The notes beneath the pieces were generated by a model. It was not told the DNA's origin, ran no database searches, and saw only the letters and a list, made by a program, of their open reading frames with translations. Shown here piece after piece: positions 13,386 to 54,512 of a DNA stretch of 64,000 bases. Source of the stretch: Penicillus capitatus (lineage: Eukaryota; Plantae; Chlorophyta); NCBI GenBank assembly GCA_965649825.1, contig OZ287696.1, positions 1,894,081 through 1,958,080 on the forward strand. Reading direction: 5' to 3'. The first letter of the stretch is position 1. Every line of letters begins with the position of its first letter. Both the position numbers and the translations under genes were made by a program.

Positions 13386-16300
13386 TCACATGTCATGGGA
13401 TCGAGCAGCGTTGGTCGAAGATGTTGTCAACTGAAGCTGGCCTCTGACCTGTCCACCGACAATCTTCCGCACCTTCACTCTTCCCGCCTTGATTTCCTTA
13501 ACGTGTTCTCGAATGTCCTTTGCATTCTGGCTCAGTTTCAGCGGCTCGATGATCACACCTTTACGCGTCACCATCTAAGAACTGAAGATAACGAGGAGAG
13601 AATTAGAATGTCAGATTTACTTTCGGGCGAACAAGATCCTCAAACGCAGCCGTGGTGTTGAAATCTGGCCCAAGCGGATGCCGTATGCTCGCTTGGTAAG
13701 CTTCCACAGACGAGAAAGTGTGCGGGATGCTCGATGCTCTATACTTATCGAGGTGATGGTTTGGCGTCTCACTGATAAAAACAAAAGGCTTCTTGGCATC
13801 TCTCCGTTTCTTGACAGCCTCTTCGCGTTTTCTGGAATGACAAAGCTGAGATAGCCTGCCAGAGATGGAAGATGGAGTGCGACCTTTGGTTCTTGGCCCT
13901 CTGCTCTCCCATCCATCTAGGTTCTTTCTGTTCGTCCTTCCATCGACCCCATCCGGGAAGCAGCGAGATCTCTTTAGCCTTGGGAAGCTCTTGAGCGACT
14001 TCTGCTTCTTTCTCTGCGCGAAACTCATCATGCACATCGTCATCAGCGAATGCCATTTTTATGAGCTCTGCTTGAGATAGCTCTGCTTCTTTTGGCCTAG
14101 CATCTAGCTGGATAACCGACGCTTCTGGTGCAACAGAAGTGGCCGCTTCGTCCTTATGGCCTGTCTCTTGATCCTTATCCGCTGGATCGGCACTAGGAGT
14201 GTCTGCATGTAGCAATGTCTTTTCAATAGTGTCTGCTTCTTCTGGCATCTGCAAGATGACTGTTTTGATGTGACAGATCACACAAAGACATGCACCTGTG
14301 CGGTCTCTTTGTCTGTGCCTTCCTTTGACAGACCTCTGAAAAGGAAAGATCGATGCACGTCCGCGATGCGCGCATTGCTCTTCTTACTGATGCCCTGAAC
14401 AAACAGAACGGTCTCGCCGCCGCACATCTCTCGCGGATAGAAGAGACTTCAGAGGAGATCGTTTGGTCAGTCATAGGGGTGGATGCCTTTTCAGAGTCAC
14501 GGAGACGTTTCTTGGCAACTTTTTTGAGTTTCTCCGATAGGCGGCGGGCTCCGTCCTCTTCAGAATCTGACGACTGCGTGCGTTTCTGGGCCTGTTCTCC
14601 TTCGAACTGCATTCTGGCCTTGCCGATGTTGTCCTCCGTCTCTTTTGTACCGTCGATCTCATGCAGCATCTTCTGTGCCGTTTCCTGCATTTCTGCCTTT
14701 CGTCTCTGCATTGCCTTCTGCATAAAGGGCAGTCCCATCAGCCCCTTCCTGGGCACAGATTCCAGATCTGCTCCGCCGTCCAAGACCTTCAACAGTTCCT
14801 TCCTCGTCTTCCTGTACTGCGCCTCTCCCTCATTGTCCGAACCACTAAAAACAGAGCTCTCACACAAGCGGTATACAAAAAGGCAGCACCTTGACGAGGA
14901 TGCCTCGTCTTCAGACGAGCCAGCCTCTGTCGACTTTATCTTTTGTTTAAGTTCCTGACTCTGACGCAACTGCTCTTCTAGTGCCTGCTTTGTCTGTTCG
15001 TCTGCTACTCCCCATCCTCGTCTCATGATTCTTTTAGCAAATCTGTTCATTGTGCTATGCTTCTGGGTCAATCTCTCTTTCATTCTGCTGTATGACATAT
15101 CTTCCAACAGTTTCCTCGCAGCTTCTTCGCTGCTCAGGCCGCTGAACTTAACAGCCTTCTTTCGGATCGCTCTTTGCAAGCGTCTGTGATATTCCTTGCT
15201 CTTGATCTTCTTGATCCGCCTCGCTTTGATCTCGTGATGAAAGAGTAGAGAACGCATCTTTGCCAGTTGTCCCCGCTTTTTCTTTAGCTCTGCCAAAGTC
15301 ATGGACTTCAGTGCGTGTTCGTCTTCTATCTTAACGATATCCTCTTCGGTGGCTGCGCCAGACGATGCTAGAATGTCTGCCATTTCTCTTTCCATCTGCG
15401 ATTCTGGTTCCAATCCGTCGACCATGTCTTCCAAAGTGTGTGATTTTTCAAGCCCTGCAGATGGCGGGCAGAACTCCAGTGTTGGAGCCATTCGGTTGGC
15501 CTAGAAAGCCAGTAGACAATCATCAGAACACAAGGATGCACAGCAGTGTTCTTACATAAACGAGATCGTCCCACTTCGAAAGACTCTGAACGGCATTTTC
15601 ATAGCCAGCTTTACGAATATGCCGATCCTGAATGCGTTTCGGCAGCGGCACAGCCAACGGTCCCTGTTTTTCCAGCGACTCCAGCGATTTGCGAACGTTC
15701 TTGAGCAACGCAGGCACGGCTGCCATTCCGGCTGTCAAATCTGATATCTGTTCTTTCTGCCCTGGCACGTACATAACCCGTAACCCTCGTTGCAAAGGCA
15801 ACAAGCATCCAAATCATACCTCCTTCATCTACCAACACATGAAAAGCACCCTCAGGTCGCGACTCCGATCGCACTGCCCTTTGCGCTTTCTTGGGACACT
15901 CTCCCAGCACAGCAGACTTTAACTTCCTATCGGCACCATCACAGAGAGCTGTCTCAAGGAAGGGTTACTCTTTCTCCATTGTTTCTTCTTCGATGTCATC
16001 GTCGCCACTGTCAAAGATCTCTTCCAGTTCTTCGTCGCTTCCAAACAGCTCATCCACCTATGCAGAGATTCACAGCAATGGATCATCCATCTGCGAAATC
16101 CACCTCGTCTGGATGATCCACCGTTTGGATGACGTCTGAGTCGACTGGCATGTCGCTATCAAACAGGTGAGAGAACTGTCGAGCGTCCTCTGGTGAGAAA
16201 GCTGTTTCTTCGTCAATCTCTTCATCATCCCCTGCCAGACCCAACTCGAATTCCCCGATCCCTTCGCCCGTCTAACATGTCCCCGGATCAACAAGAGCCG

Positions 16301-19114: not shown

Positions 19115-21239
19115 ATGTCGAGATGTCCTCTTCAGATGCCGTCGTCTATTCGATCGTCGATGTCGACAGACACTGTCGTTCCACGTCGTCACTTGAACGG
19201 CGCCGCCTAAAAAGATCGTGTGTGTGCAGGGGATCAAAGAGAATAGCATCGATGCTTTTCTCGAGGTTTTGCAAAGAGAGAGTGATCAACACCTGCACAT
19301 TCTGCTGAACCTTCCTACGCCAAATTCGTCTGTGCTCGCCTTTCTAACAGCTCTTCAGGATCGACAAACTCTGGATGCAGTGTATCTCGTGGAAACGCCA
19401 TCGTTACAGGGTACGTGCTGACGCCCTCTATTCCGTATAAGTACACGTATCTTTCATCAGTTCCGGTTCGGACCTTGGATGTGGCTGACGTCGTTCAGAG
19501 CGTTTCGCTGACTGCCGCTGCTGGGCGAATGCAGAATGCAGAAGTGGATGTCTTGCTCCTTGAGCCAGATCACGTTGCTGTCAATGGCGATGCGTCTGTT
19601 GATCTGACAGCCTTGGCACTGGCCATGCTTGCCAAAGACGCCAACGTTCCGCTTTACCTCATCACAGACACATCGACCATGAGATGGGATGTCGTTGACG
19701 GTAATGGGATCAGAAAAGACATCACTGCGGATAAGGCCGTGATTTCGGCCGATCTGATCCACGGCATCGTAACGGAACGTGGCATCCTGCATAAGGAAGG
19801 AACCAAATTCGACGTCACATCACTCGACCCATCTGGAAAGGCCAGCAACTCACTTTGCAAGTTTTCGGAGTTTCTGCCCTTGACAGAGCAAACCGCAATC
19901 GAATACATCCAGGCCAATCCATCCTTTGCCAAAAGACTGGGCCCTCCTGGAGTCCAGCTAAAATGCTGGGAAGCAAAAGATGGCAACATTAACTACATAT
20001 ACATCGTGGAGGGTCCAGAAGGTGGACTGGTTATCAAACAGGCGCGTCCATACATTCGCGTCGTCGGCGAATCGTGGCCACTGACACAGGTTTCATTCAT
20101 ACAGATGTCACATCAGAAGGAGATCCGTGTCTATACAGGATCGTCTCCGTATTGAAGGGAATTGGATGAAGGAGCAGAACAAGATCTGTCCACAGTACAT
20201 TCCTGATCTCTATCTGTTGGATGAAACGATGTCCTTGATTGTTATGGAGTATCTGGCGCCGCCCTTCCAGTCGCTCCGTGCAGGTATCTTGGCCGGCAAG
20301 ACTTATCCCATGATGCCGAACCAAGTCGCAGAATTCTTGGCGCAGTCTCTTTTCTTTACCTCTGCCCTGGCTCTGAAATCGGATGTCTACCGAGCGAAGG
20401 TTAAAGAGTTTCATAACCCTGAGCTTTGTCAGGCAACAGAGCAGGTTATTTTTATGGATGCATACTACGATGCACCAACCAATGCTTATCTGAAACCAGA
20501 GTTCGAGCACGCCGCCGCCGATTTGAGAAATGACATCGAAGCCAAAGTCGCCATCGGCCGCCTGCGCAATGCCTTCCTGTCAAAAATGCAAGCCCTGATT
20601 CATTCTGATTTCCACACCGGAAGCGTGATGGTGAAAGAGGACGCCATGGTCGTGTTTGACAGCGAATTTGCATTCTATGGGCCAATGGCATTCGACGTGG
20701 GGAAGTTCATTGGTAACCTGCTGCTAACATTCTTTGCTCTTGATGGCCATTCGACAACGGATCTCCCCCGAGAAGAGCAGCAAGAATGGATCCTTGATAG
20801 CGTCATCCAAGTGTGTTCCGTCTGTCGAAGGACTGATGTTAGTCTTTTGAATGGTCTTCAGATCTGGGAAGGATTTCGCAGGAACTTCTTGCAACTGTGG
20901 AATGATCATTTGGGGATGGGCGATGCCTATCCCAATCCGTTGATCCAACATCCGGAGAAAGCTCTGTCGGCAATCCAAGCAGACTTCATGGATCGTCTTT
21001 TTCATGAGGCTCTTGGATTTGCAGCTGCCTGTATGATTCGCAGAATTGTGACCATCGCGCAGATTGCAGATTACACGACGATTCAGAACAGAACTGTCAG
21101 AACCGTCTGTTCAGAACGGGCTTTGAAATTTGCCAGGAGACTTCTTGTGAACGCAATGGACAAGAACGCATTCCCAGATATCCACAAAGTCATTCAAGAG
21201 GCGAAGAAAATCCAGAAGAACCCTTTCGAAACTGTCTAA
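19115..21239 (+). CDS. MTK1: 5-methylthioribose kinase (MtnK/MTK) with a fused N-terminal degenerate MTR-1-P isomerase (MtnA/eIF2B-alpha-like) domain; start approximate
   Basis: Kinase motifs DGNINYIYIV, VIKQARPYIRVVGESWPLT, QALIHSDFHTGS, VFDSEFAFYGPMAFDVG. The same uninterrupted ORF (19415-20155) carries upstream VDVLLLEPDHVAVNGD...AMLAKDANVPLYL...ADLIHGIVTERGIL, matching the MtnA C-terminal pattern. Confidence 0.92.
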
Positions 21240-40672: not shown

Positions 40673-42726
40673 TTAAGAAAGATACCCTATGATTCTTTTG
40701 CGTTCCTCTGCGGCGCATTTGAAAGAACGACATATGACATCGCTTGGCTTGTCGCCAGTCTCTGACGTCAATGTTACGTCGGCACAGGCATCGACAAGCA
40801 ACTTGACGATGGCAGCATTTCCTTCCGATGCGGCGTAATGCAGCGGCGTCCATTCTTTCTCGTCCTCGATGTTCACATCCGCCCCATAGTAAATGAGATT
40901 CTGAGAAGATAGACAGACACGCTTAAGTACTGCGGTGTTTGAGAATGGATATCCTTACACTCGCGATCGGCTTGTGTCCAGCGATGACGGCGTGATGCAA
41001 AGCTGTCTGTCCATCTTCGTCTTGCAAATTTTCGGGAGCTTTGTTTCTCAACAGGACCTGCGGAACAGTTGGCGATCGTCTGTGGCCTGTGCGAGAGATC
41101 CTTACTCTCAAAATGGCGATGTGGCCATATTGCGAAGCAAACATCAGTGGCGTCATGCCTTTCTTGTCCCTCACTGAAATATTGGCCATGTATCCAATGA
41201 GCATCTACATCTAGTCCAACATCTCCCTGCCGTATAAGTTATATGGAAAATGACTTTGGCCGATTCTGTGGCATCGTATTTTGCAGCTAGGTGAAGGAAA
41301 TGCAGTCCATTTGTCGAGCCATCGGGTTTAACACCGAGTTCAAGCAAGGCTTCGACCATACTCCAATCGTCATTCTCGATCGCCACGCTCATTATCTGAA
41401 ATACGATGATGCCTAAGGTTCAGCCTTGCAGTTGCTCTTCTTCATTACCTCAGTGCGATGATCCAGTGAACTGTCTTCTTTCATCAGCTCCTACGAATCG
41501 CTTTCACTGTGGCAATGGAGGGTGCGAGCTCACTTACGTTCTGTATCCTCGTTGTCGGCGTCTCCTTTCGACATTTTTTCGTGGTCTAAATTCCGCCAGG
41601 TAGAGAATCTGTTAACAGTGAGGGAGTGGTATGGTTACCTTCTTGACGATCCCTTTGGTCGTTTTGACGATCCAGTCGCTGAAAAAAGACAGTCTGATGT
41701 AGACACCGGGATCTTTCTCGCCACATGTCTCTCCGCCAAAGGACGTGATGCCGATGATGGTATCTTTCTTTGGCGATCCCTCGTCCACGCGTCCTCTAGG
41801 TTGATCTAACTCAAGCAGTGGACCTCCAGAATCTCCTGAAATATCCTTGCACGTGTCAAAGGGACAGAGATAAGTGTTCAGCAGTGCAGTGCACCTGAGC
41901 AGGTGTCCTGTTCGGACGCGGCACAGAGATGGTGGCTTTTTGGATGGTAGTTAAGTCGTCTAGCGCAGTGGTCCTCCTCAAAGACCTGCAAAGTCGTTGC
42001 CTGCTTGAGCTGATCGCTGTATCTGGTGCTTTTCGCGAATTCGGCTCCCCAACCGAGGGCTGTAAACTGCTGTCCCGGGAGAAGCTCACAAAAACGACCC
42101 AGATCCAATTTGGGTGTCGGCAAATCAAATCCATCACGAAACTCCAGCAGAGCGATGTCATAACCCTGACTCACATCGCTATCATTATACTTGGGATGTA
42201 TGTGCGTGATAATCGGAACAAACGCCTAAACGGCAGAAAGCGATGACGGGTATGCCAAACATCTTGTGGGTACTTACTTTTCCCGGGTCGAACGCGCCGA
42301 TGTTTTGGACGCCGCAAAGCACTGGGGCGTTGTATGCGGCTCGAATATCGTTAGGGTCGACGCAATGGGCGGCGGTCAGGACCCACTTCGAGTGAATTAA
42401 GAATCCGCCACATGCGAATTTGAAGCCTCTGTTGTACAGAGCGCACATATAGGGATAGCGTCCCTTTGGTGCGTCATCACCACCGATGATTTTCTCTCTA
42501 TGATTCCGTTCTTTACATTCTTTCCGACCTGCCAAGAAATAACCGTTCCGCCTAGTATAGACGCAAGACAAGGCTCGCTGTGCTACGCACCTGACACCAT
42601 CGGCAGAAGTTGGGCCGAAAAGAATAACAGCAACAGCATAAGGGAACGCCATTCTCGAAGAGTGATGAATTCCATGCAACGAAGAGAATTCATGGCGGTA
42701 CGAGATGTAGCGCAAGAAATGTCCAT
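40673..42726 (-). CDS. Trypsin-family (S1A) serine protease with a signal peptide and C-terminal ankyrin repeats
   Basis: LMLLLLFFSAQLLPMVS|G signal, K-IIGG activation site, CGGFLIHSKWVLTAAHC (His), YDIALL (Asp), DTCS|GDSGGPL (Ser), IIGITSFG. Phase-0 introns of 53, 47 and 53 nt join it to ankyrin repeats (GMTPLMFAS, GQTALHHAV, WTPLHYAA). Confidence 0.9.
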
Positions 42727-42848
42727 CGGGTTTTAAAACAGCTGAAAGATGGACCCTTCGGTAGTATTCTGGTGAGACTAATGGTATGTCAGCGCCTCCT
42801 CATATTTGCACCCTTCCAACCGTCGACTCCATCTGTCGATTTCACTGT

Positions 42849-43958
42849 ATGTTCATCTCATTTCTGCACCGCTCGTGTGCTCGAGTCCGACCAGAATGGA
42901 AAGAGATTTTGCGGCCCTTAGCAGATGGGACAGCGCATAGAAGGCCCTCCGTTGCCGCCAGGGTGCGTTGCATCACGAACAGCACCTTCGAGACGATTCG
43001 AGTGAACCGACGCGAAACCGTTCAAGTTTTGACGCTCAATCGACCGGAAAAGCTAAACGCGCTCTCCTCACAGTGCAGCTCAGAACTATTGCACTGTTTG
43101 AAAACAGCAGACACGGATGACAGCATACATGTGACGATACTGACTGGCAGTGGAAAAGTGAAAAGAGTGACCTTGATCGATATTCCACGCATCTCTGTCA
43201 AATAGGTCTTCTGCGCTGGAGCAGATATCGAAGAGATGAGCCAGTGGACAGCCGAGCAAGTGACAAGAGAGCAGAAATTCTATGAATGGACAAACATACA
43301 AGTGTGTGGCGCTGTCCACGGAAGTCCGTCCGATGTGCTCTCGATCTCAGGCGTTGCGCAAACCGACAATTGCTGCTGTGAATGGCGCAGCGATTGGAGG
43401 CGGCTGTGAGCTTGCCATGCTATGCGATATCATCATCGCCTCGGAGAATGCCTATTTCGCTCAGCCTGAAGTGAACGTCGGTGTCATTCCTGGTATGGGC
43501 GGCACGCAGCGACTGATCCGGGCGGTTGGAAAATCCAAAGCCATGGAAATGATCCTCACAGGTTCGCAAGGGGCACACCACCTCGCTTCTCATTTTCATG
43601 TCTGAGGGATCAGGTGACGCCAAGGGCTTGACGGCAGCGGACGCACTGAGCTATGGACTGGTCAGTCGTGTCGTTCCAGAAGGAAAGGTTCTGGAAGAGG
43701 CCATGCAGATCGCTCAGCGCATTGCCAAACGATCACGTCCCATCATCATGAAAGCGAAGAAATGCGCCAACGATGCTTATGAAATGGGTAACCGTCACAT
43801 CCGACGGATACCCTCCCGCAGACGGACATTTCTTAGGACTGTCACCAGCATTGGCATCTGAGCTCAAAGCATTTTGGTCGTGTTTCGAGCACAGCGATTC
43901 GAAAGAGGGACTCAGAGCTTTCTTGGAAAAGAGAGAGCCAGACTTTAAACATCAATAG
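42849..43958 (+). CDS. ECHS1: Mitochondrial enoyl-CoA hydratase (crotonase)
   Basis: [18 protein letters not shown]|[86 protein letters not shown]. Confidence 0.92.
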
Positions 43959-53012: not shown

Positions 53013-54512
53013 ATGAGTTGTCGTCTTTCTCCGAGAACTGAAGAAGAACAACAAGAGAATAATACTCAGTGTTTCAGCGGTCTGTTGGACGCAGACTCCG
53101 TTTCCAATCTCACATTCTGGCAGGACGATTTTGACCTACCTGTCAATACTTTACCATTTAACTGCGATACAAACGACCAACAATCGTTCATGAGCACCGG
53201 CAGGAACGACATACCACCGCCACTCGATAGATCAGGCACACAAACTGTAAAGCCAAACATTGAGCTTGGAAACGAGCTCAAACAGGTGGAGATTCATCCA
53301 GAGAGCAAATATGAGAGCACCGTATGTCATGTCTCAGAAATCGCCCTGGCGCAGATGCGTGTGTGTTTTGTAGCTTGATATGTTGAATCCAGCAGCAACC
53401 ATTGCTGGACACGACTTCGAATCGACAACCGTACACATGGCACCCGCCAATATGTACATCCAACATCACGGACTGTGTCATACATTTCCTATGATGCGTA
53501 CGCCATTTCTGACTCCGTGGAGCGGAAGTTTACGAAAGGGTGGTTGATGCTGGTCTAGATGGAATGTCATGTGATCCACGTGAGAATCCCTTTATGGCCA
53601 CAACGCATGTCGTGCCGGCCGCGCATGTGGGACACAGATCCATGACTTCAGGAGTGTCACACAAACAACGACTGAGATGGACCCCTGAACTTCATGCTCT
53701 GTTTGTGGATGCCGTCAAGAGTCTGGGAGGAGCACGAAAGGCCACACCCAAAGGTCTCTCTCGTTGAGTTTGTGTCACTGACCGATCGCGTGTGACGTTT
53801 GCGGTTTCCAGGGATTCTCAAATTAATGAAGATCGACGGCCTGACGATCTTTCACGTAAAGAGTCATCTGCAAAAATACCGTTTAACACCCATGTCAGAA
53901 CCAGATATAAGTTCGCAAGGAAGCGCCAATCCTCTCAATGTACCCATCTCTACCGTTGAGTATCTTCTGTGAGAGCTGTGGGCAGTTTGTCAATGTTTTG
54001 GACGGATTGGATGACCCTCCTCTGAAAATGCCCTCTTTACAGGCATCCACTTCAGAGGGGTTGATGAGTGGTCATGCGACGAAAAAGAGAAAAACAGAAT
54101 CGGGAGAAGAAGATTTGGTGCCGTCCTTGGATGCCGAGATGCTGCAGCATGCAAAGGGTCGTCGACAGAAACTGGAGGAAGCCTTAATTCTGCAAATGCG
54201 AGCTCAGAGACACCTCCAAGATCAGCTCGAAGTACATCCCTCTTTTCGATCACTCTCTCTAAAACGACGAGGCCTGTTCAGTCTCAAAGAAAGCTGCAAC
54301 AGTGCTTAGACGCCCATGCACGTTATATTACAAGTTTGGCGAAGCAAGTGGGTCTCGAGACGAAGTATCCAGAACTTGGAAGTGGCGAAGTGGAGAGTAA
54401 CGATTTCACAGAAACACATAATGGTGATACTGGTGGATCGCCAGATCATCCAACGACTGGCGAATCTGATTCCAAAGGCACAGTCACGCATCTCACTGTT
54501 CGACGGACATGA
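53013..54512 (+). CDS. GARP MYB-CC transcription factor (PHR1/PSR1 family)
   Basis: KQRLRWTPELHALFVDAVKSLGGARKATPK|GILKLMKIDGLTIFHVKSHLQKYRL (SHLQKY MYB); coiled coil EALILQMRAQRHLQDQLE|SQRKLQQCLDAHARY. Confidence 0.9.

What the first reader, a model, noticed from the sequence alone, without database searches (positions are those of the whole stretch)
40673..42726. Secreted-type trypsin protease fused to C-terminal ankyrin repeats
Seen: a signal peptide, short propeptide, IIGG activation site and intact His/Asp/Ser triad, with Asp in the S1 pocket (DTCS-GDSGG). The protease continues through three phase-0 GT-AG introns (41586-41638, 41491-41537, 41396-41448) into about 4 ankyrin repeats with no stop codon. 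Established: S1A proteases are disulfide-bonded extracellular enzymes, while ankyrin repeats are mostly cytosolic interaction modules, so the pairing is unusual. Inference: a lineage-specific substrate-targeting protease, possibly for defence or wound response if this is a siphonous alga.
Basis: partly seen in the sequence, partly recalled or inferred. Interest (0 to 1): 0.75.

Follow-up and report, generated by a model that had tools for sequence, protein, structure and literature searches.

The report
Secreted trypsin–ankyrin fusion protease gene
This is a real, intact ten-exon gene for a secreted trypsin-type protease joined to five ankyrin repeats, and it belongs to an apparently undescribed protein family found in siphonous green seaweeds, whose function has not been tested.

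Summary
On the minus strand, 42693..40673 encodes a 512-aa protein from 10 exons and 9 GT-AG introns of 47-62 nt. It has a signal peptide, a 12-aa propeptide, a K|IIGG activation site and an S1A trypsin domain. The domain has an intact His/Asp/Ser triad, Asp189/Gly216/Gly226 and three canonical disulfides. A Lys/Arg-rich linker, five ankyrin repeats and a Cys-x4-Cys tail follow.

The fusion is not a splicing artefact:
- The same collinear architecture occurs in at least 15 proteins of Bryopsis, Caulerpa and Ostreobium.
- It also occurs as uninterrupted 564-748 aa ORFs on transcript-like contigs.
- Three intron positions are shared with the Bryopsis and Ostreobium genes.
- A syntenic relative (86% DNA identity) keeps the frame and the GT/AG sites of introns 1-5.

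Corrections: the conserved start is ATG 42693, not 42726, and there are nine introns and five repeats.

No-TM members have 2 or 4 tail cysteines. The one paralog with a transmembrane helix between the domains has none. This suggests the ankyrins work in an oxidising (luminal or extracellular) compartment.

Function (exosite, anchor or cleavable pro-domain; wound or defence role) is inference. The papers I searched do not describe the architecture. Moderate interest.

The parts
40673..42693 (-). Whole coding region: 10 exons, 512 aa, from the conserved ATG at 42693 to the TAA at 40675-40673. An upstream in-frame ATG at 42726 is not conserved.
   Evidence: model; Pfam; start codon conservation
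42591..42693 (-). Exon 1: most of the signal peptide. Basic n-region, h-region LMLLLLFFSAQLL, c-region PMVSG with Val at -3 and Gly at -1. It ends in phase 1.
   Evidence: One search finds this as the only hydrophobic 19-mer in the protein. One search shows the frame kept in L004/L005 with a 3-nt indel. No SignalP run; judged by the -3/-1 rule.
42529..42590 (-). Intron 1 (62 nt, GTGCGT...CAG)
   Evidence: GT/AG conserved, and indels of 4, 1 and 4 nt occur only here. The alternative unspliced start (MAFPYAV...) loses its ATG in the relatives.
42278..42528 (-). Exon 2: propeptide RKECKERNHREK (42526-42491), activation site K|IIGG (42490-42479), and His57 in TAAHC (42367-42365).
   Evidence: The relative has VKR|IVGG.
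42226..42277 (-). Intron 2 (52 nt). Position shared with the Ostreobium and Bryopsis homolog genes.
41895..42225 (-). Exon 3: Asp102 (42159-42157), Cys122-like Cys in RFCELLPG, the Cys168-Cys182 pair, Asp189 (41907-41905) and Cys191.
41836..41894 (-). Intron 3 (59 nt, phase 1), inside the Gly codon of CSG|DSGG. The same position and phase occur in Ostreobium P0026 and Bryopsis P0005.
41639..41835 (-). Exon 4: Ser195 (41830-41828), a family-specific loop LELDQPRGRVDEGSPKKDTII (41815-41753), Gly216, Cys220, Gly226, and the end of the trypsin domain.
   Evidence: The loop's Gly and Asp are invariant and its Pro nearly invariant in the family.
41586..41638 (-). Intron 4 (53 nt, phase 0), directly after the protease domain. 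It sits within about 2 residues of an intron in the Ostreobium and Bryopsis genes. Read-through gives a stop.
   Evidence: GT/AG conserved, identity only 57%, 3-nt indel, and read-through also stops in the relative. Also.
41449..41585 (-). Linker: micro-exons 5 (41585-41538, 16 aa) and 6 (41490-41449, 14 aa), separated by intron 5 (41537-41491). Lys/Arg-rich, with one Cys.
   Evidence: Exon 5 is open, has no indel and is 77% identical in L004/L005, against 57% and 66% for the flanking introns. Exon 6 aligns to Caulerpa P0002 (LDHRTEIMS / LDKRQALMD). Ostreobium also has a 16-aa linker micro-exon.
40760..41395 (-). Five ankyrin repeats (aa 325-484) on exons 7-10. Introns 7-9 (41254-41205, 41105-41058, 40958-40901) are all phase 0 and lie at equivalent repeat positions. 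Exons 8 and 9 are each exactly 99 nt, one repeat.
   Evidence: (helix pairs, pLDDT 88-98; gap-free colinearity with Caulerpa P0002 across intron 7)
40676..40741 (-). C-terminal tail DVICRSFKCAAEERKRIIGYLS: two Cys that are invariant in the family (40732-40730 and 40717-40715), followed by an amphipathic helix.
   Evidence: invariant columns; 2 or 4 tail Cys in 15 of 15 no-TM members, 0 in the TM-bearing paralog

Best explanation
Shown. This is one gene. It encodes a zymogen of a trypsin-specificity S1A serine protease that enters the secretory pathway and carries a C-terminal module of five ankyrin repeats capped by a cysteine pair. It is a member of a multi-copy family found in siphonous green algae. 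That family is a branch of the large S1 protease expansion already reported for Ostreobium and Caulerpa.

Inferred mechanism:
1. The signal peptide is removed after ...PMVSG.
2. The 12-residue propeptide is cut after Lys at K|IIGG, by the enzyme itself or by a paralog. The new Ile N-terminus then pairs with Asp194 and switches the enzyme on.
3. The propeptide may stay tethered through Cys39 and the Cys122-like Cys164.
4. With no transmembrane segment, the ankyrin module is translocated together with the protease and folds in the oxidising lumen. The conserved tail cysteines argue for this.
5. There it acts as a protein-binding exosite or anchor that fixes where, or on what, the protease cuts.

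A wound-plug or defence role is plausible for giant single-celled algae but has not been tested.
For: Domains and catalytic residues:
- Pfam hits for trypsin and ankyrin.
- The triad, Asp189, Gly216, Gly226 and the 42-58, 168-182 and 191-220 cysteines align with kallikrein-8 and enteropeptidase.
- The predicted structure matches solved proteases at target-normalised TM 0.82-0.85.

Fusion:
- One collinear HSP to Caulerpa P0002 covers aa 48-507, E 2e-68.
- The same architecture at 83-97% query coverage occurs in Bryopsis, Caulerpa, Ostreobium P0183 and Logan contigs. Ostreobium P0026 shares it on an N-truncated model.
- Uninterrupted 564-748 aa ORFs lie on 2.3-3.0 kb contigs L001-L003.
- Three intron positions are shared with the Ostreobium and Bryopsis genes, including the one just after the protease domain.
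- The syntenic relatives L004/L005 keep GT/AG for introns 1-5. Non-3n indels occur in introns only. The alternative ATGs are not conserved.

Selection: dN/dS is 0.34 over 247 trypsin codons.

Secretion: the N-terminus is the only hydrophobic segment.

Oxidising compartment for the ankyrins: 2 or 4 tail Cys in 15 of 15 members without a TM, and none in P0183, which has a TM helix between the domains.

Family context: 189 peptidase S1 genes in Ostreobium and 57 in Caulerpa (10.1101/2020.07.21.211367).
Against: - There is no transcript from this organism. Exons 6-10 have no ortholog sequence, because the related contigs as fetched stop at window position ~41478.
- Linker exon 5 evolves fast (7 nonsynonymous against 2 synonymous differences, dN/dS 0.54 on 16 codons), so its coding status rests on conserved splice sites and an intact frame.
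- Signal-peptide cleavage was judged by eye, not by a predictor.
- AlphaFold2 gives pTM 0.51 with a low-confidence linker, so no docking of the ankyrins onto the protease is supported.
- The link between a TM helix and missing tail cysteines rests on a single TM-bearing gene model.
- No experiment in any species bears on function.
Confidence: 0.6

Rival explanations
1. The ankyrin module is a cleavable C-terminal pro-domain rather than a permanent exosite. It would serve sorting, folding or auto-inhibition. After activation, the Arg/Lys-specific protease cuts its own Lys/Arg-rich linker and releases the module.
For: The linker VKKTTKKCRKETPTTR is dense in P1 residues for an Asp189 enzyme, and the relative's linker IKKSTERCRKDTPTMRR is the same. 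The linker has pLDDT below 50. Linkers across the family are variable and low in complexity.
Against: Several homologs have Pro/Ser/Glu-rich linkers without basic clusters, or residue 189 = Gly, Ala or Glu. The linker Cys299, kept in the relative, could tether the halves. The strong conservation of the ankyrin tail argues for a function of its own.
Confidence: 0.2
2. These are two genes wrongly joined: a trypsin gene ending at ...PLPHC* through retention of intron 4, and a separate ankyrin gene starting at an internal ATG in exon 5, 6 or 7.
For: Read-through of intron 4 reaches a stop in both the window and the relative. The genome is compact, and the neighbouring enoyl-CoA hydratase ORF begins less than 100 nt from this gene's start. 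In-frame GT-AG joins are easy to find by chance, with 556 chains.
Against: The ATG of 'MSKGDADNE' is GTG in the relatives. GT/AG of introns 4 and 5 are conserved, and the introns have the normal 47-53 nt length. At least 15 homologs show the fusion, some on uninterrupted ORF contigs. An intron lies at the same place in the Ostreobium and Bryopsis genes. An ankyrin protein with a conserved disulfide-type tail but no signal peptide of its own would be odd.
Confidence: 0.07
3. The N-terminal hydrophobic segment is an uncleaved signal anchor. The protein would then be a type II membrane protease, with both the protease and the ankyrins outside the cell or in the lumen.
For: The n-region is long (16 residues). 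The best structural matches include the type II proteases enteropeptidase and matriptase. A propeptide Cys and a Cys122-like Cys are present, as in those enzymes.
Against: The h-region is short (about 13 residues) and is followed by a canonical small-residue -3/-1 site kept in the relative (VSG|R and VSG|Q). There is no stem region between the anchor and the protease.
Confidence: 0.1

Closest known systems
Unnamed Bryopsidales trypsin-ankyrin proteins (Bryopsis sp. KO-2023 BSKO_04685, 04686, 04699, 04714, 04794; Caulerpa lentillifera g8885.t1, g4201.t1; Ostreobium quekettii unnamed products)
   Same: Signal peptide, S1A domain with a family-specific loop after GDSGGPL, variable linker, ankyrin repeats, and a Cys-pair tail ending in an amphipathic helix. 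Three intron positions are shared. Identity is 29-35% over the full length.
   Different: The window protein has the shortest linker class, five repeats (Bryopsis paralogs have up to about a dozen), and much shorter introns. It shares an extra Cys63-Cys106 pair only with the Caulerpa proteins. All are annotated 'hypothetical', and none has been characterised.
Peptidase S1 / trypsin-domain expansion reported for Ostreobium and Caulerpa (Iha et al., 10.1101/2020.07.21.211367)
   Same: The same protease family in the same algal order. Many members are predicted to be secreted. Trypsin-only relatives (P0040, P0041, P0049) share the family loop.
   Different: That paper does not mention ankyrin fusions (0 occurrences). 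It proposes external protein degradation for an endolithic lifestyle.
Animal mosaic S1A proteases: type II transmembrane proteases (enteropeptidase, matriptase), kallikreins, factor D
   Same: Best sequence and fold matches. Zymogen activation at (K/R)|I-[IV]-G-G, Asp189 specificity, the conserved disulfides, and a possible Cys1-Cys122-type propeptide tether.
   Different: Their accessory domains (LDLa, SRCR, CUB, SEA) are N-terminal and typically extracellular. Here the accessory module is C-terminal and made of ankyrin repeats, with no stem region.
Arthropod clip-domain protease cascades controlled by serpins (easter, prophenoloxidase-activating factors)
   Same: Works-like analogy only. These are multi-paralog secreted S1A zymogens with a non-catalytic interaction domain that act in rapid wound and immune reactions. 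In Bryopsis a serpin gene lies 2 kb upstream of one paralog.
   Different: No clip domain (no PF12032 hit). No cascade has been demonstrated. No serpin-like sequence in this window matched the Bryopsis serpin fragments (tblastn).
Bacterial-type trypsin-linker-ankyrin proteins from metagenomes (P0127; P0170 with added caspase and peptidoglycan-binding domains)
   Same: Signal peptide, S1A domain, Pro-rich linker, C-terminal ankyrin repeats, and terminal cysteines.
   Different: They lack the algal family loop after GDSGGPL and have 10 or more repeats. Alignment to the window protein is domain by domain only, so the architecture probably arose independently.

Membership tests
Peptidase S1A (chymotrypsin/trypsin, PF00089) | Full-length match to the family profile above the curated cut-off | tested here: met
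   149.9 bits against a cut-off of 20.6, profile 1-220/220
Peptidase S1A (chymotrypsin/trypsin, PF00089) | Catalytic triad His57/Asp102/Ser195 in the TAAHC / DIAL / GDSGGP motifs | tested here: met
   Invariant columns H, D and S in the family alignments. Aligned to kallikrein-8.
Peptidase S1A (chymotrypsin/trypsin, PF00089) | Zymogen activation: a new Ile16 N-terminus (I-[IV]-G-G) plus Asp194 | tested here: met
   REK|IIGG and GDSGG in the window; VKR|IVGG in the relative
Peptidase S1A (chymotrypsin/trypsin, PF00089) | Conserved disulfides 42-58, 168-182 and 191-220 | tested here: met
   Cys74-90, Cys205-219 and Cys227-266 by alignment. Bonding itself was not tested.
Peptidase S1A (chymotrypsin/trypsin, PF00089) | Double beta-barrel fold | tested here: met
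   AF2 model pLDDT mostly 80-94 in the domain. Foldseek target-normalised TM 0.82-0.85 to enteropeptidase, KLK8 and Streptomyces trypsin.
Peptidase S1A (chymotrypsin/trypsin, PF00089) | Proteolytic activity with Arg/Lys P1 preference | not testable with these tools
   Predicted from Asp189/Gly216/Gly226 only
Ankyrin repeat (PF00023 / PF12796) | Tandem 33-residue helix-turn-helix repeats that match the profiles | tested here: met
   Ank 111 bits and Ank_2 106 bits. Five helix pairs with pLDDT 88-98.
Bryopsidales trypsin-ankyrin family (unnamed) | Collinear full-length similarity: protease, linker, ankyrin, tail | tested here: met
   83-97% query coverage to the full-length homologs. A single HSP to Caulerpa P0002.
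Bryopsidales trypsin-ankyrin family (unnamed) | Insertion after GDSGGPL with conserved G-x-P-x-x-D, and a C-terminal Cys pair plus amphipathic helix | tested here: met
   The loop G and D and both tail Cys are invariant in both alignments. The loop P is invariant in A1 and nearly invariant in A3.
Bryopsidales trypsin-ankyrin family (unnamed) | Shared intron positions | tested here: met
   Three positions shared with the Ostreobium (L006) and Bryopsis (L007) genes
Bryopsidales trypsin-ankyrin family (unnamed) | Host organism belongs to Bryopsidales | tested here: inconclusive
   Green-lineage marker present (MYB-CC fragment), and plant uL4 gives the best PDB hit by a narrow margin. But RPL4 is only 63% identical to Bryopsis. 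The nearest relatives are unnamed metagenome contigs.
Type II transmembrane serine proteases | N-terminal cytoplasmic tail, signal anchor, a stem of accessory domains, and a C-terminal protease domain | tested here: not met
   The protease follows a 12-aa propeptide directly. The accessory module is C-terminal. There is no other hydrophobic segment.
Clip-domain serine proteases | N-terminal clip domain (PF12032) | tested here: not met
   No PF12032 hit at E <= 0.01

The most novel reading that the evidence does not exclude
Siphonous green algae may have built their own extracellular or vacuolar zymogen system. It would consist of many paralogous trypsin-type proteases with diversified S1 pockets (Asp, Gly, Ala, Glu or Arg at position 189) and serpin partners. 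Disulfide-capped ankyrin repeats, normally a cytosolic module, would serve as luminal or extracellular exosites. The system would drive the seconds-scale wound-plug and cytoplasm-aggregation response of these giant single cells. That would be functionally convergent with animal clotting and clip-protease cascades.
Probability: 0.15. Interest if true: 0.8.

Novelty: new variant of a known kind. Interest (0 to 1): 0.5.

Why it matters
S1A proteases are rare in the plant lineage, yet they have expanded greatly in siphonous green algae. These organisms are single giant cells that must seal wounds within seconds.

A conserved, multi-copy subfamily joins a secreted protease to ankyrin repeats with a disulfide-type cap. 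It gives a concrete, testable candidate for how proteolysis is aimed in these cells. It would also be a clear case of ankyrin repeats working outside the cytosol.

The work also supplies a corrected gene model (start codon, nine introns) for a gene that no retrieved database protein matches. RNAi already exists for Bryopsis (PMC12961179), so the Bryopsis paralogs can be tested directly.

Tried and rejected
- **Unspliced alternative start.** MAFPYAVAVILF... (frame 0) also looks like a signal peptide. I rejected it because its ATG is GTG in both relatives, and intron 1 shows non-3n indels.
- **ATG 42726 as start.** Rejected, because it is ACG in the relatives.
- **A missed transmembrane exon between the domains.** None of the three frames of 41638-41396 holds a hydrophobic stretch, and the spliced protein has no second hydrophobic segment.
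- **Paralogs or a serpin in the window.** None found.
- **Profile search of 1.84 billion representatives.** It was swamped by giant ankyrin proteins. It only added three more Bryopsis paralogs and gave no usable family count.
- **JGI metagenome scan with the ankyrin half.** It returned only generic ankyrin proteins at 30-40% identity. L014 is a bacterial-type ankyrin ORF.
- **3' half of the ortholog.** Exons 6-10 therefore lack ortholog support.
- **Organism identification.** RPL4 gave only unnamed relatives. The window is not Ostreobium, Bryopsis or Caulerpa, judged by intron size, RPL4 identity, or GC (50% against the 40.4% reported for Caulerpa).
- **AlphaFold2.** No confident inter-domain arrangement (pTM 0.51). 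No solved structure covers both domains.
- **Other features.** Rfam, tRNA and tandem-repeat scans found nothing. Plus-strand ORFs across the gene have no Pfam match.
- **Literature.** Six searches and four papers checked by term search mention no trypsin-ankyrin architecture.
Full report
**What is there**

The minus strand between 42726 and 40673 was read in all three frames and spliced into a 10-exon model with nine GT-AG introns of 47-62 nt. The product matches Pfam Trypsin over the whole profile (E 1.2e-43) and several ankyrin families (E 1e-22 to 1e-33).

Coordinates below are, and residue numbers count from the conserved start.

| Feature | Residues / motif |
|---|---|
| Signal peptide | 1-35, ending ...PMVSG |
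| Propeptide | 36-47 |
| Activation site | K|IIGG |
| Catalytic triad | His89 (TAAHC), Asp141 (DIALL), Ser231 (GDSGGP) |
| S1 pocket | Asp225 (= Asp189), Gly262 (= Gly216), Gly272 (= Gly226) |
| Canonical cysteine pairs | 42-58, 168-182, 191-220 (chymotrypsin numbering) |

This pocket predicts Arg/Lys specificity. The best solved relatives by sequence and by fold are kallikrein-8 and -6, enteropeptidase, factor D and matriptase, at about 25-31% identity and target-normalised TM 0.8-0.85.

After the protease come three parts:
- a 30-residue Lys/Arg-rich linker on two micro-exons;
- five ankyrin repeats, seen as helix pairs with pLDDT 88-98;
- the tail DVICRSFKCAAEERKRIIGYLS.

Exons 8 and 9 are each exactly 99 nt, one repeat. 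Introns 7-9 are phase 0 and lie at equivalent repeat positions.

There is no second hydrophobic segment. The window holds no paralog. There is no RNA gene or tandem repeat in the region, and no Pfam domain on the opposite strand.

**Is the fusion real?**

Frame continuity alone is weak evidence. 556 different chains of up to three GT-AG introns join the protease frame to the ankyrin frame. The case rests on four independent lines.

1. *Recurrence.* The full collinear architecture recurs at 29-35% identity in these proteins:

| Source | Proteins |
|---|---|
| Bryopsis sp. KO-2023 | BSKO_04685, 04686, 04699, 04714, 04794, all on one 7.4-Mb contig |
| Caulerpa lentillifera | g8885.t1, g4201.t1 |
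| Ostreobium quekettii | P0026, P0183 |
| Logan assemblies | several proteins |

   A single BLASTP segment joins the window protein to the Caulerpa protein from IIGG to the tail. It includes the exon-6 residues (LDHRTEIMS against LDKRQALMD).

2. *Uninterrupted ORFs.* Three Logan contigs of 2.3-3.0 kb carry uninterrupted 564-748 aa trypsin+ankyrin ORFs. They look like transcripts, although no poly-A tail was seen.

3. *Shared introns.* The Ostreobium and Bryopsis genes share three intron positions with the window gene:
   - after DPGK;
   - inside the Gly codon of CxG|DSGG;
   - directly after the protease domain.

   Ostreobium also has a 16-residue linker micro-exon.

4. *A syntenic relative.* Two ENA metagenome contigs (ERZ26696514, L004 and L005) are collinear with window 41495-62970 at 86% DNA identity. 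Their alignment to the gene shows the following:
   - GT and AG are conserved for introns 1-5.
   - Indels of 1, 4 and 5 nt occur only in introns. Exons carry only 3-nt indels.
   - Exon 5 is open and free of indels. It is 77% identical, against 57% and 66% for its flanking introns.
   - The alternative ATGs that would start a separate ankyrin gene, or an unspliced protease, are lost.
   - The ATG at 42726 is ACG in both contigs, while the ATG at 42693 is conserved.

dN/dS is 0.34 over the 247 trypsin codons. The gene is constrained but fast-evolving.

The weak points:
- There is no transcript from this organism.
- Exons 6-10 have no ortholog sequence.
- Linker exon 5 is under little constraint.

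**Topology**

The family itself partly resolves it.

All 15 algal members without an internal transmembrane segment have 2 or 4 cysteines in the tail after the last repeat. Two of those cysteines are invariant. The one member with a transmembrane helix between protease and ankyrins (Ostreobium P0183) has none.

An even, conserved cysteine count is what disulfide bonding predicts. The ankyrin module of the window protein therefore most likely folds in the ER lumen and travels with the protease. This is inference, and the TM example is a single gene model.

AlphaFold2 gives two confident domains but pTM 0.51 and a disordered linker. It supports no docking of the ankyrins on the active site.

**Likely mechanism**

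Shown:
- an intact S1A zymogen signature with a trypsin-type pocket;
- an N-terminal signal sequence;
- a C-terminal ankyrin module conserved across a family.

Inferred:
- The signal peptide is cleaved after VSG, which has Val at -3 and Gly at -1 and is kept in the relative.
- Activation occurs by cleavage after Lys47. A trypsin-type enzyme or a paralog can do this.
- The propeptide may be tethered through Cys39 and the Cys122-like Cys164.
- The ankyrin module acts as an exosite or anchor.

The main rival is that the ankyrins are a cleavable pro-domain. The linker is full of Lys/Arg sites for this very enzyme.

Residue 189 varies across paralogs: Asp, Gly, Ala, Glu or Arg. Trypsin-only relatives with the same family loop carry other Cys-rich tails. 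This marks a diversifying family with exchangeable C-terminal modules.

**Comparison with what is known**

The Ostreobium genome paper reports 189 peptidase S1 genes there, 159 of them with the trypsin domain, and 57 in Caulerpa. About 40% of the Ostreobium genes are predicted secreted. It does not mention ankyrins.

The Bryopsis, Halimeda and Bryopsidales phylogenomics papers mention neither trypsin nor ankyrin. Other literature searches found nothing relevant.

Bacterial-type metagenome proteins also combine trypsin, a Pro-rich linker and ankyrins. They lack the algal loop and align only domain by domain, so the architecture probably arose independently.

The gene is not a type II transmembrane protease and not a clip-domain protease, because their defining features are absent.

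**Organism**

The organism was not identified.
- The window has about 50% GC and many genes closely spaced.
- It carries plant-type gene fragments: MYB with the MYB-CC LHEQLE motif, ArgJ, and a methylthioribose-kinase-like gene.
- Plant uL4 gives the best PDB match, by a narrow margin.
- RPL4 is only 63% identical to that of Bryopsis.
- Introns are far shorter than in the Bryopsis and Ostreobium homolog genes.

It is a green-lineage eukaryote that shares this family with Bryopsidales, and so is plausibly a siphonous or related ulvophyte. That placement remains open.

**Verdict**

I rate it a new variant of a known kind: an S1A protease with a C-terminal, apparently luminal ankyrin module. It sits in an uncharacterised family that is already present in databases as hypothetical proteins. 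Interest is moderate.

Noticed in passing
L007:1-6285 (Bryopsis sp. KO-2023 contig BSYQ01000004.1): A serpin gene (PF00079) ends about 2 kb upstream of the trypsin-ankyrin gene BSKO_04714. Five trypsin-ankyrin paralogs (BSKO_04685, 04686, 04699, 04714, 04794) lie on this one 7.4-Mb contig, and two of them have consecutive locus tags.
   Followed up: partly
P0183 (Ostreobium quekettii, 639 aa), residues 397-429: This paralog has a transmembrane helix between the trypsin domain and the ankyrin repeats. It has Arg at position 189 and no C-terminal cysteines. That suggests a membrane-spanning variant with cytosolic ankyrins.
   Followed up: partly
P0011, P0015, P0030 (Logan contigs; e.g. L002:117-1811): These family members carry an extra Cys-rich module between the linker and the ankyrins (CxCS..G.S......GC.....G...CY.......C......FPGA.W..CE). 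It has no Pfam match.
   Followed up: no
L004:1-20729 and L005:1-20729 (ENA ERZ26696514, contigs of 646 and 929 kb): Two long metagenome contigs at about 155-175x coverage are collinear with window 41495-62970 at 86% identity. They look like two haplotypes or strains of an unnamed close relative. Gene order is conserved: trypsin, ECH, subtilase, SelO, zf-DNL, RPL4, MYB-CC, PROPPIN, DPCD, WD40.
   Followed up: partly
window 42693-42800: The protease gene lies head to head with an enoyl-CoA hydratase gene (ORF from 42786, plus strand; ECH_1 hits at 42786-43205 and 43282-43605). Less than 100 nt separates the two starts, so the shared promoter region is very short.
   Followed up: no
window 19415-21239 (+): An IF-2B-family ORF (methylthioribose-1-phosphate-isomerase-like) overlaps at its end a 370-aa APH-family ORF (methylthioribose-kinase-like) on the same strand. 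This may be a fused or tightly linked pair of methionine-salvage genes.
   Followed up: partly
window 53540-54309 (+): Exon fragments of a MYB (SHLQKY-type) plus MYB-CC LHEQLE transcription factor, a family I know from green plants and algae. This is the clearest lineage marker in the window.
   Followed up: partly
window 14001-16000: Strong strand composition skew (GC skew -0.154, AT skew -0.208). It coincides with a 422-aa Glu/Lys/Ser-rich ORF on the minus strand (14223-15491), which looks like a nucleolar Utp14-type protein by eye.
   Followed up: no
P0170 (ENA metagenome protein, 1040 aa): A bacterial-type protein that combines a caspase/CHAT domain, a peptidoglycan-binding domain, a trypsin domain and ankyrin repeats in one chain.
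   Followed up: no
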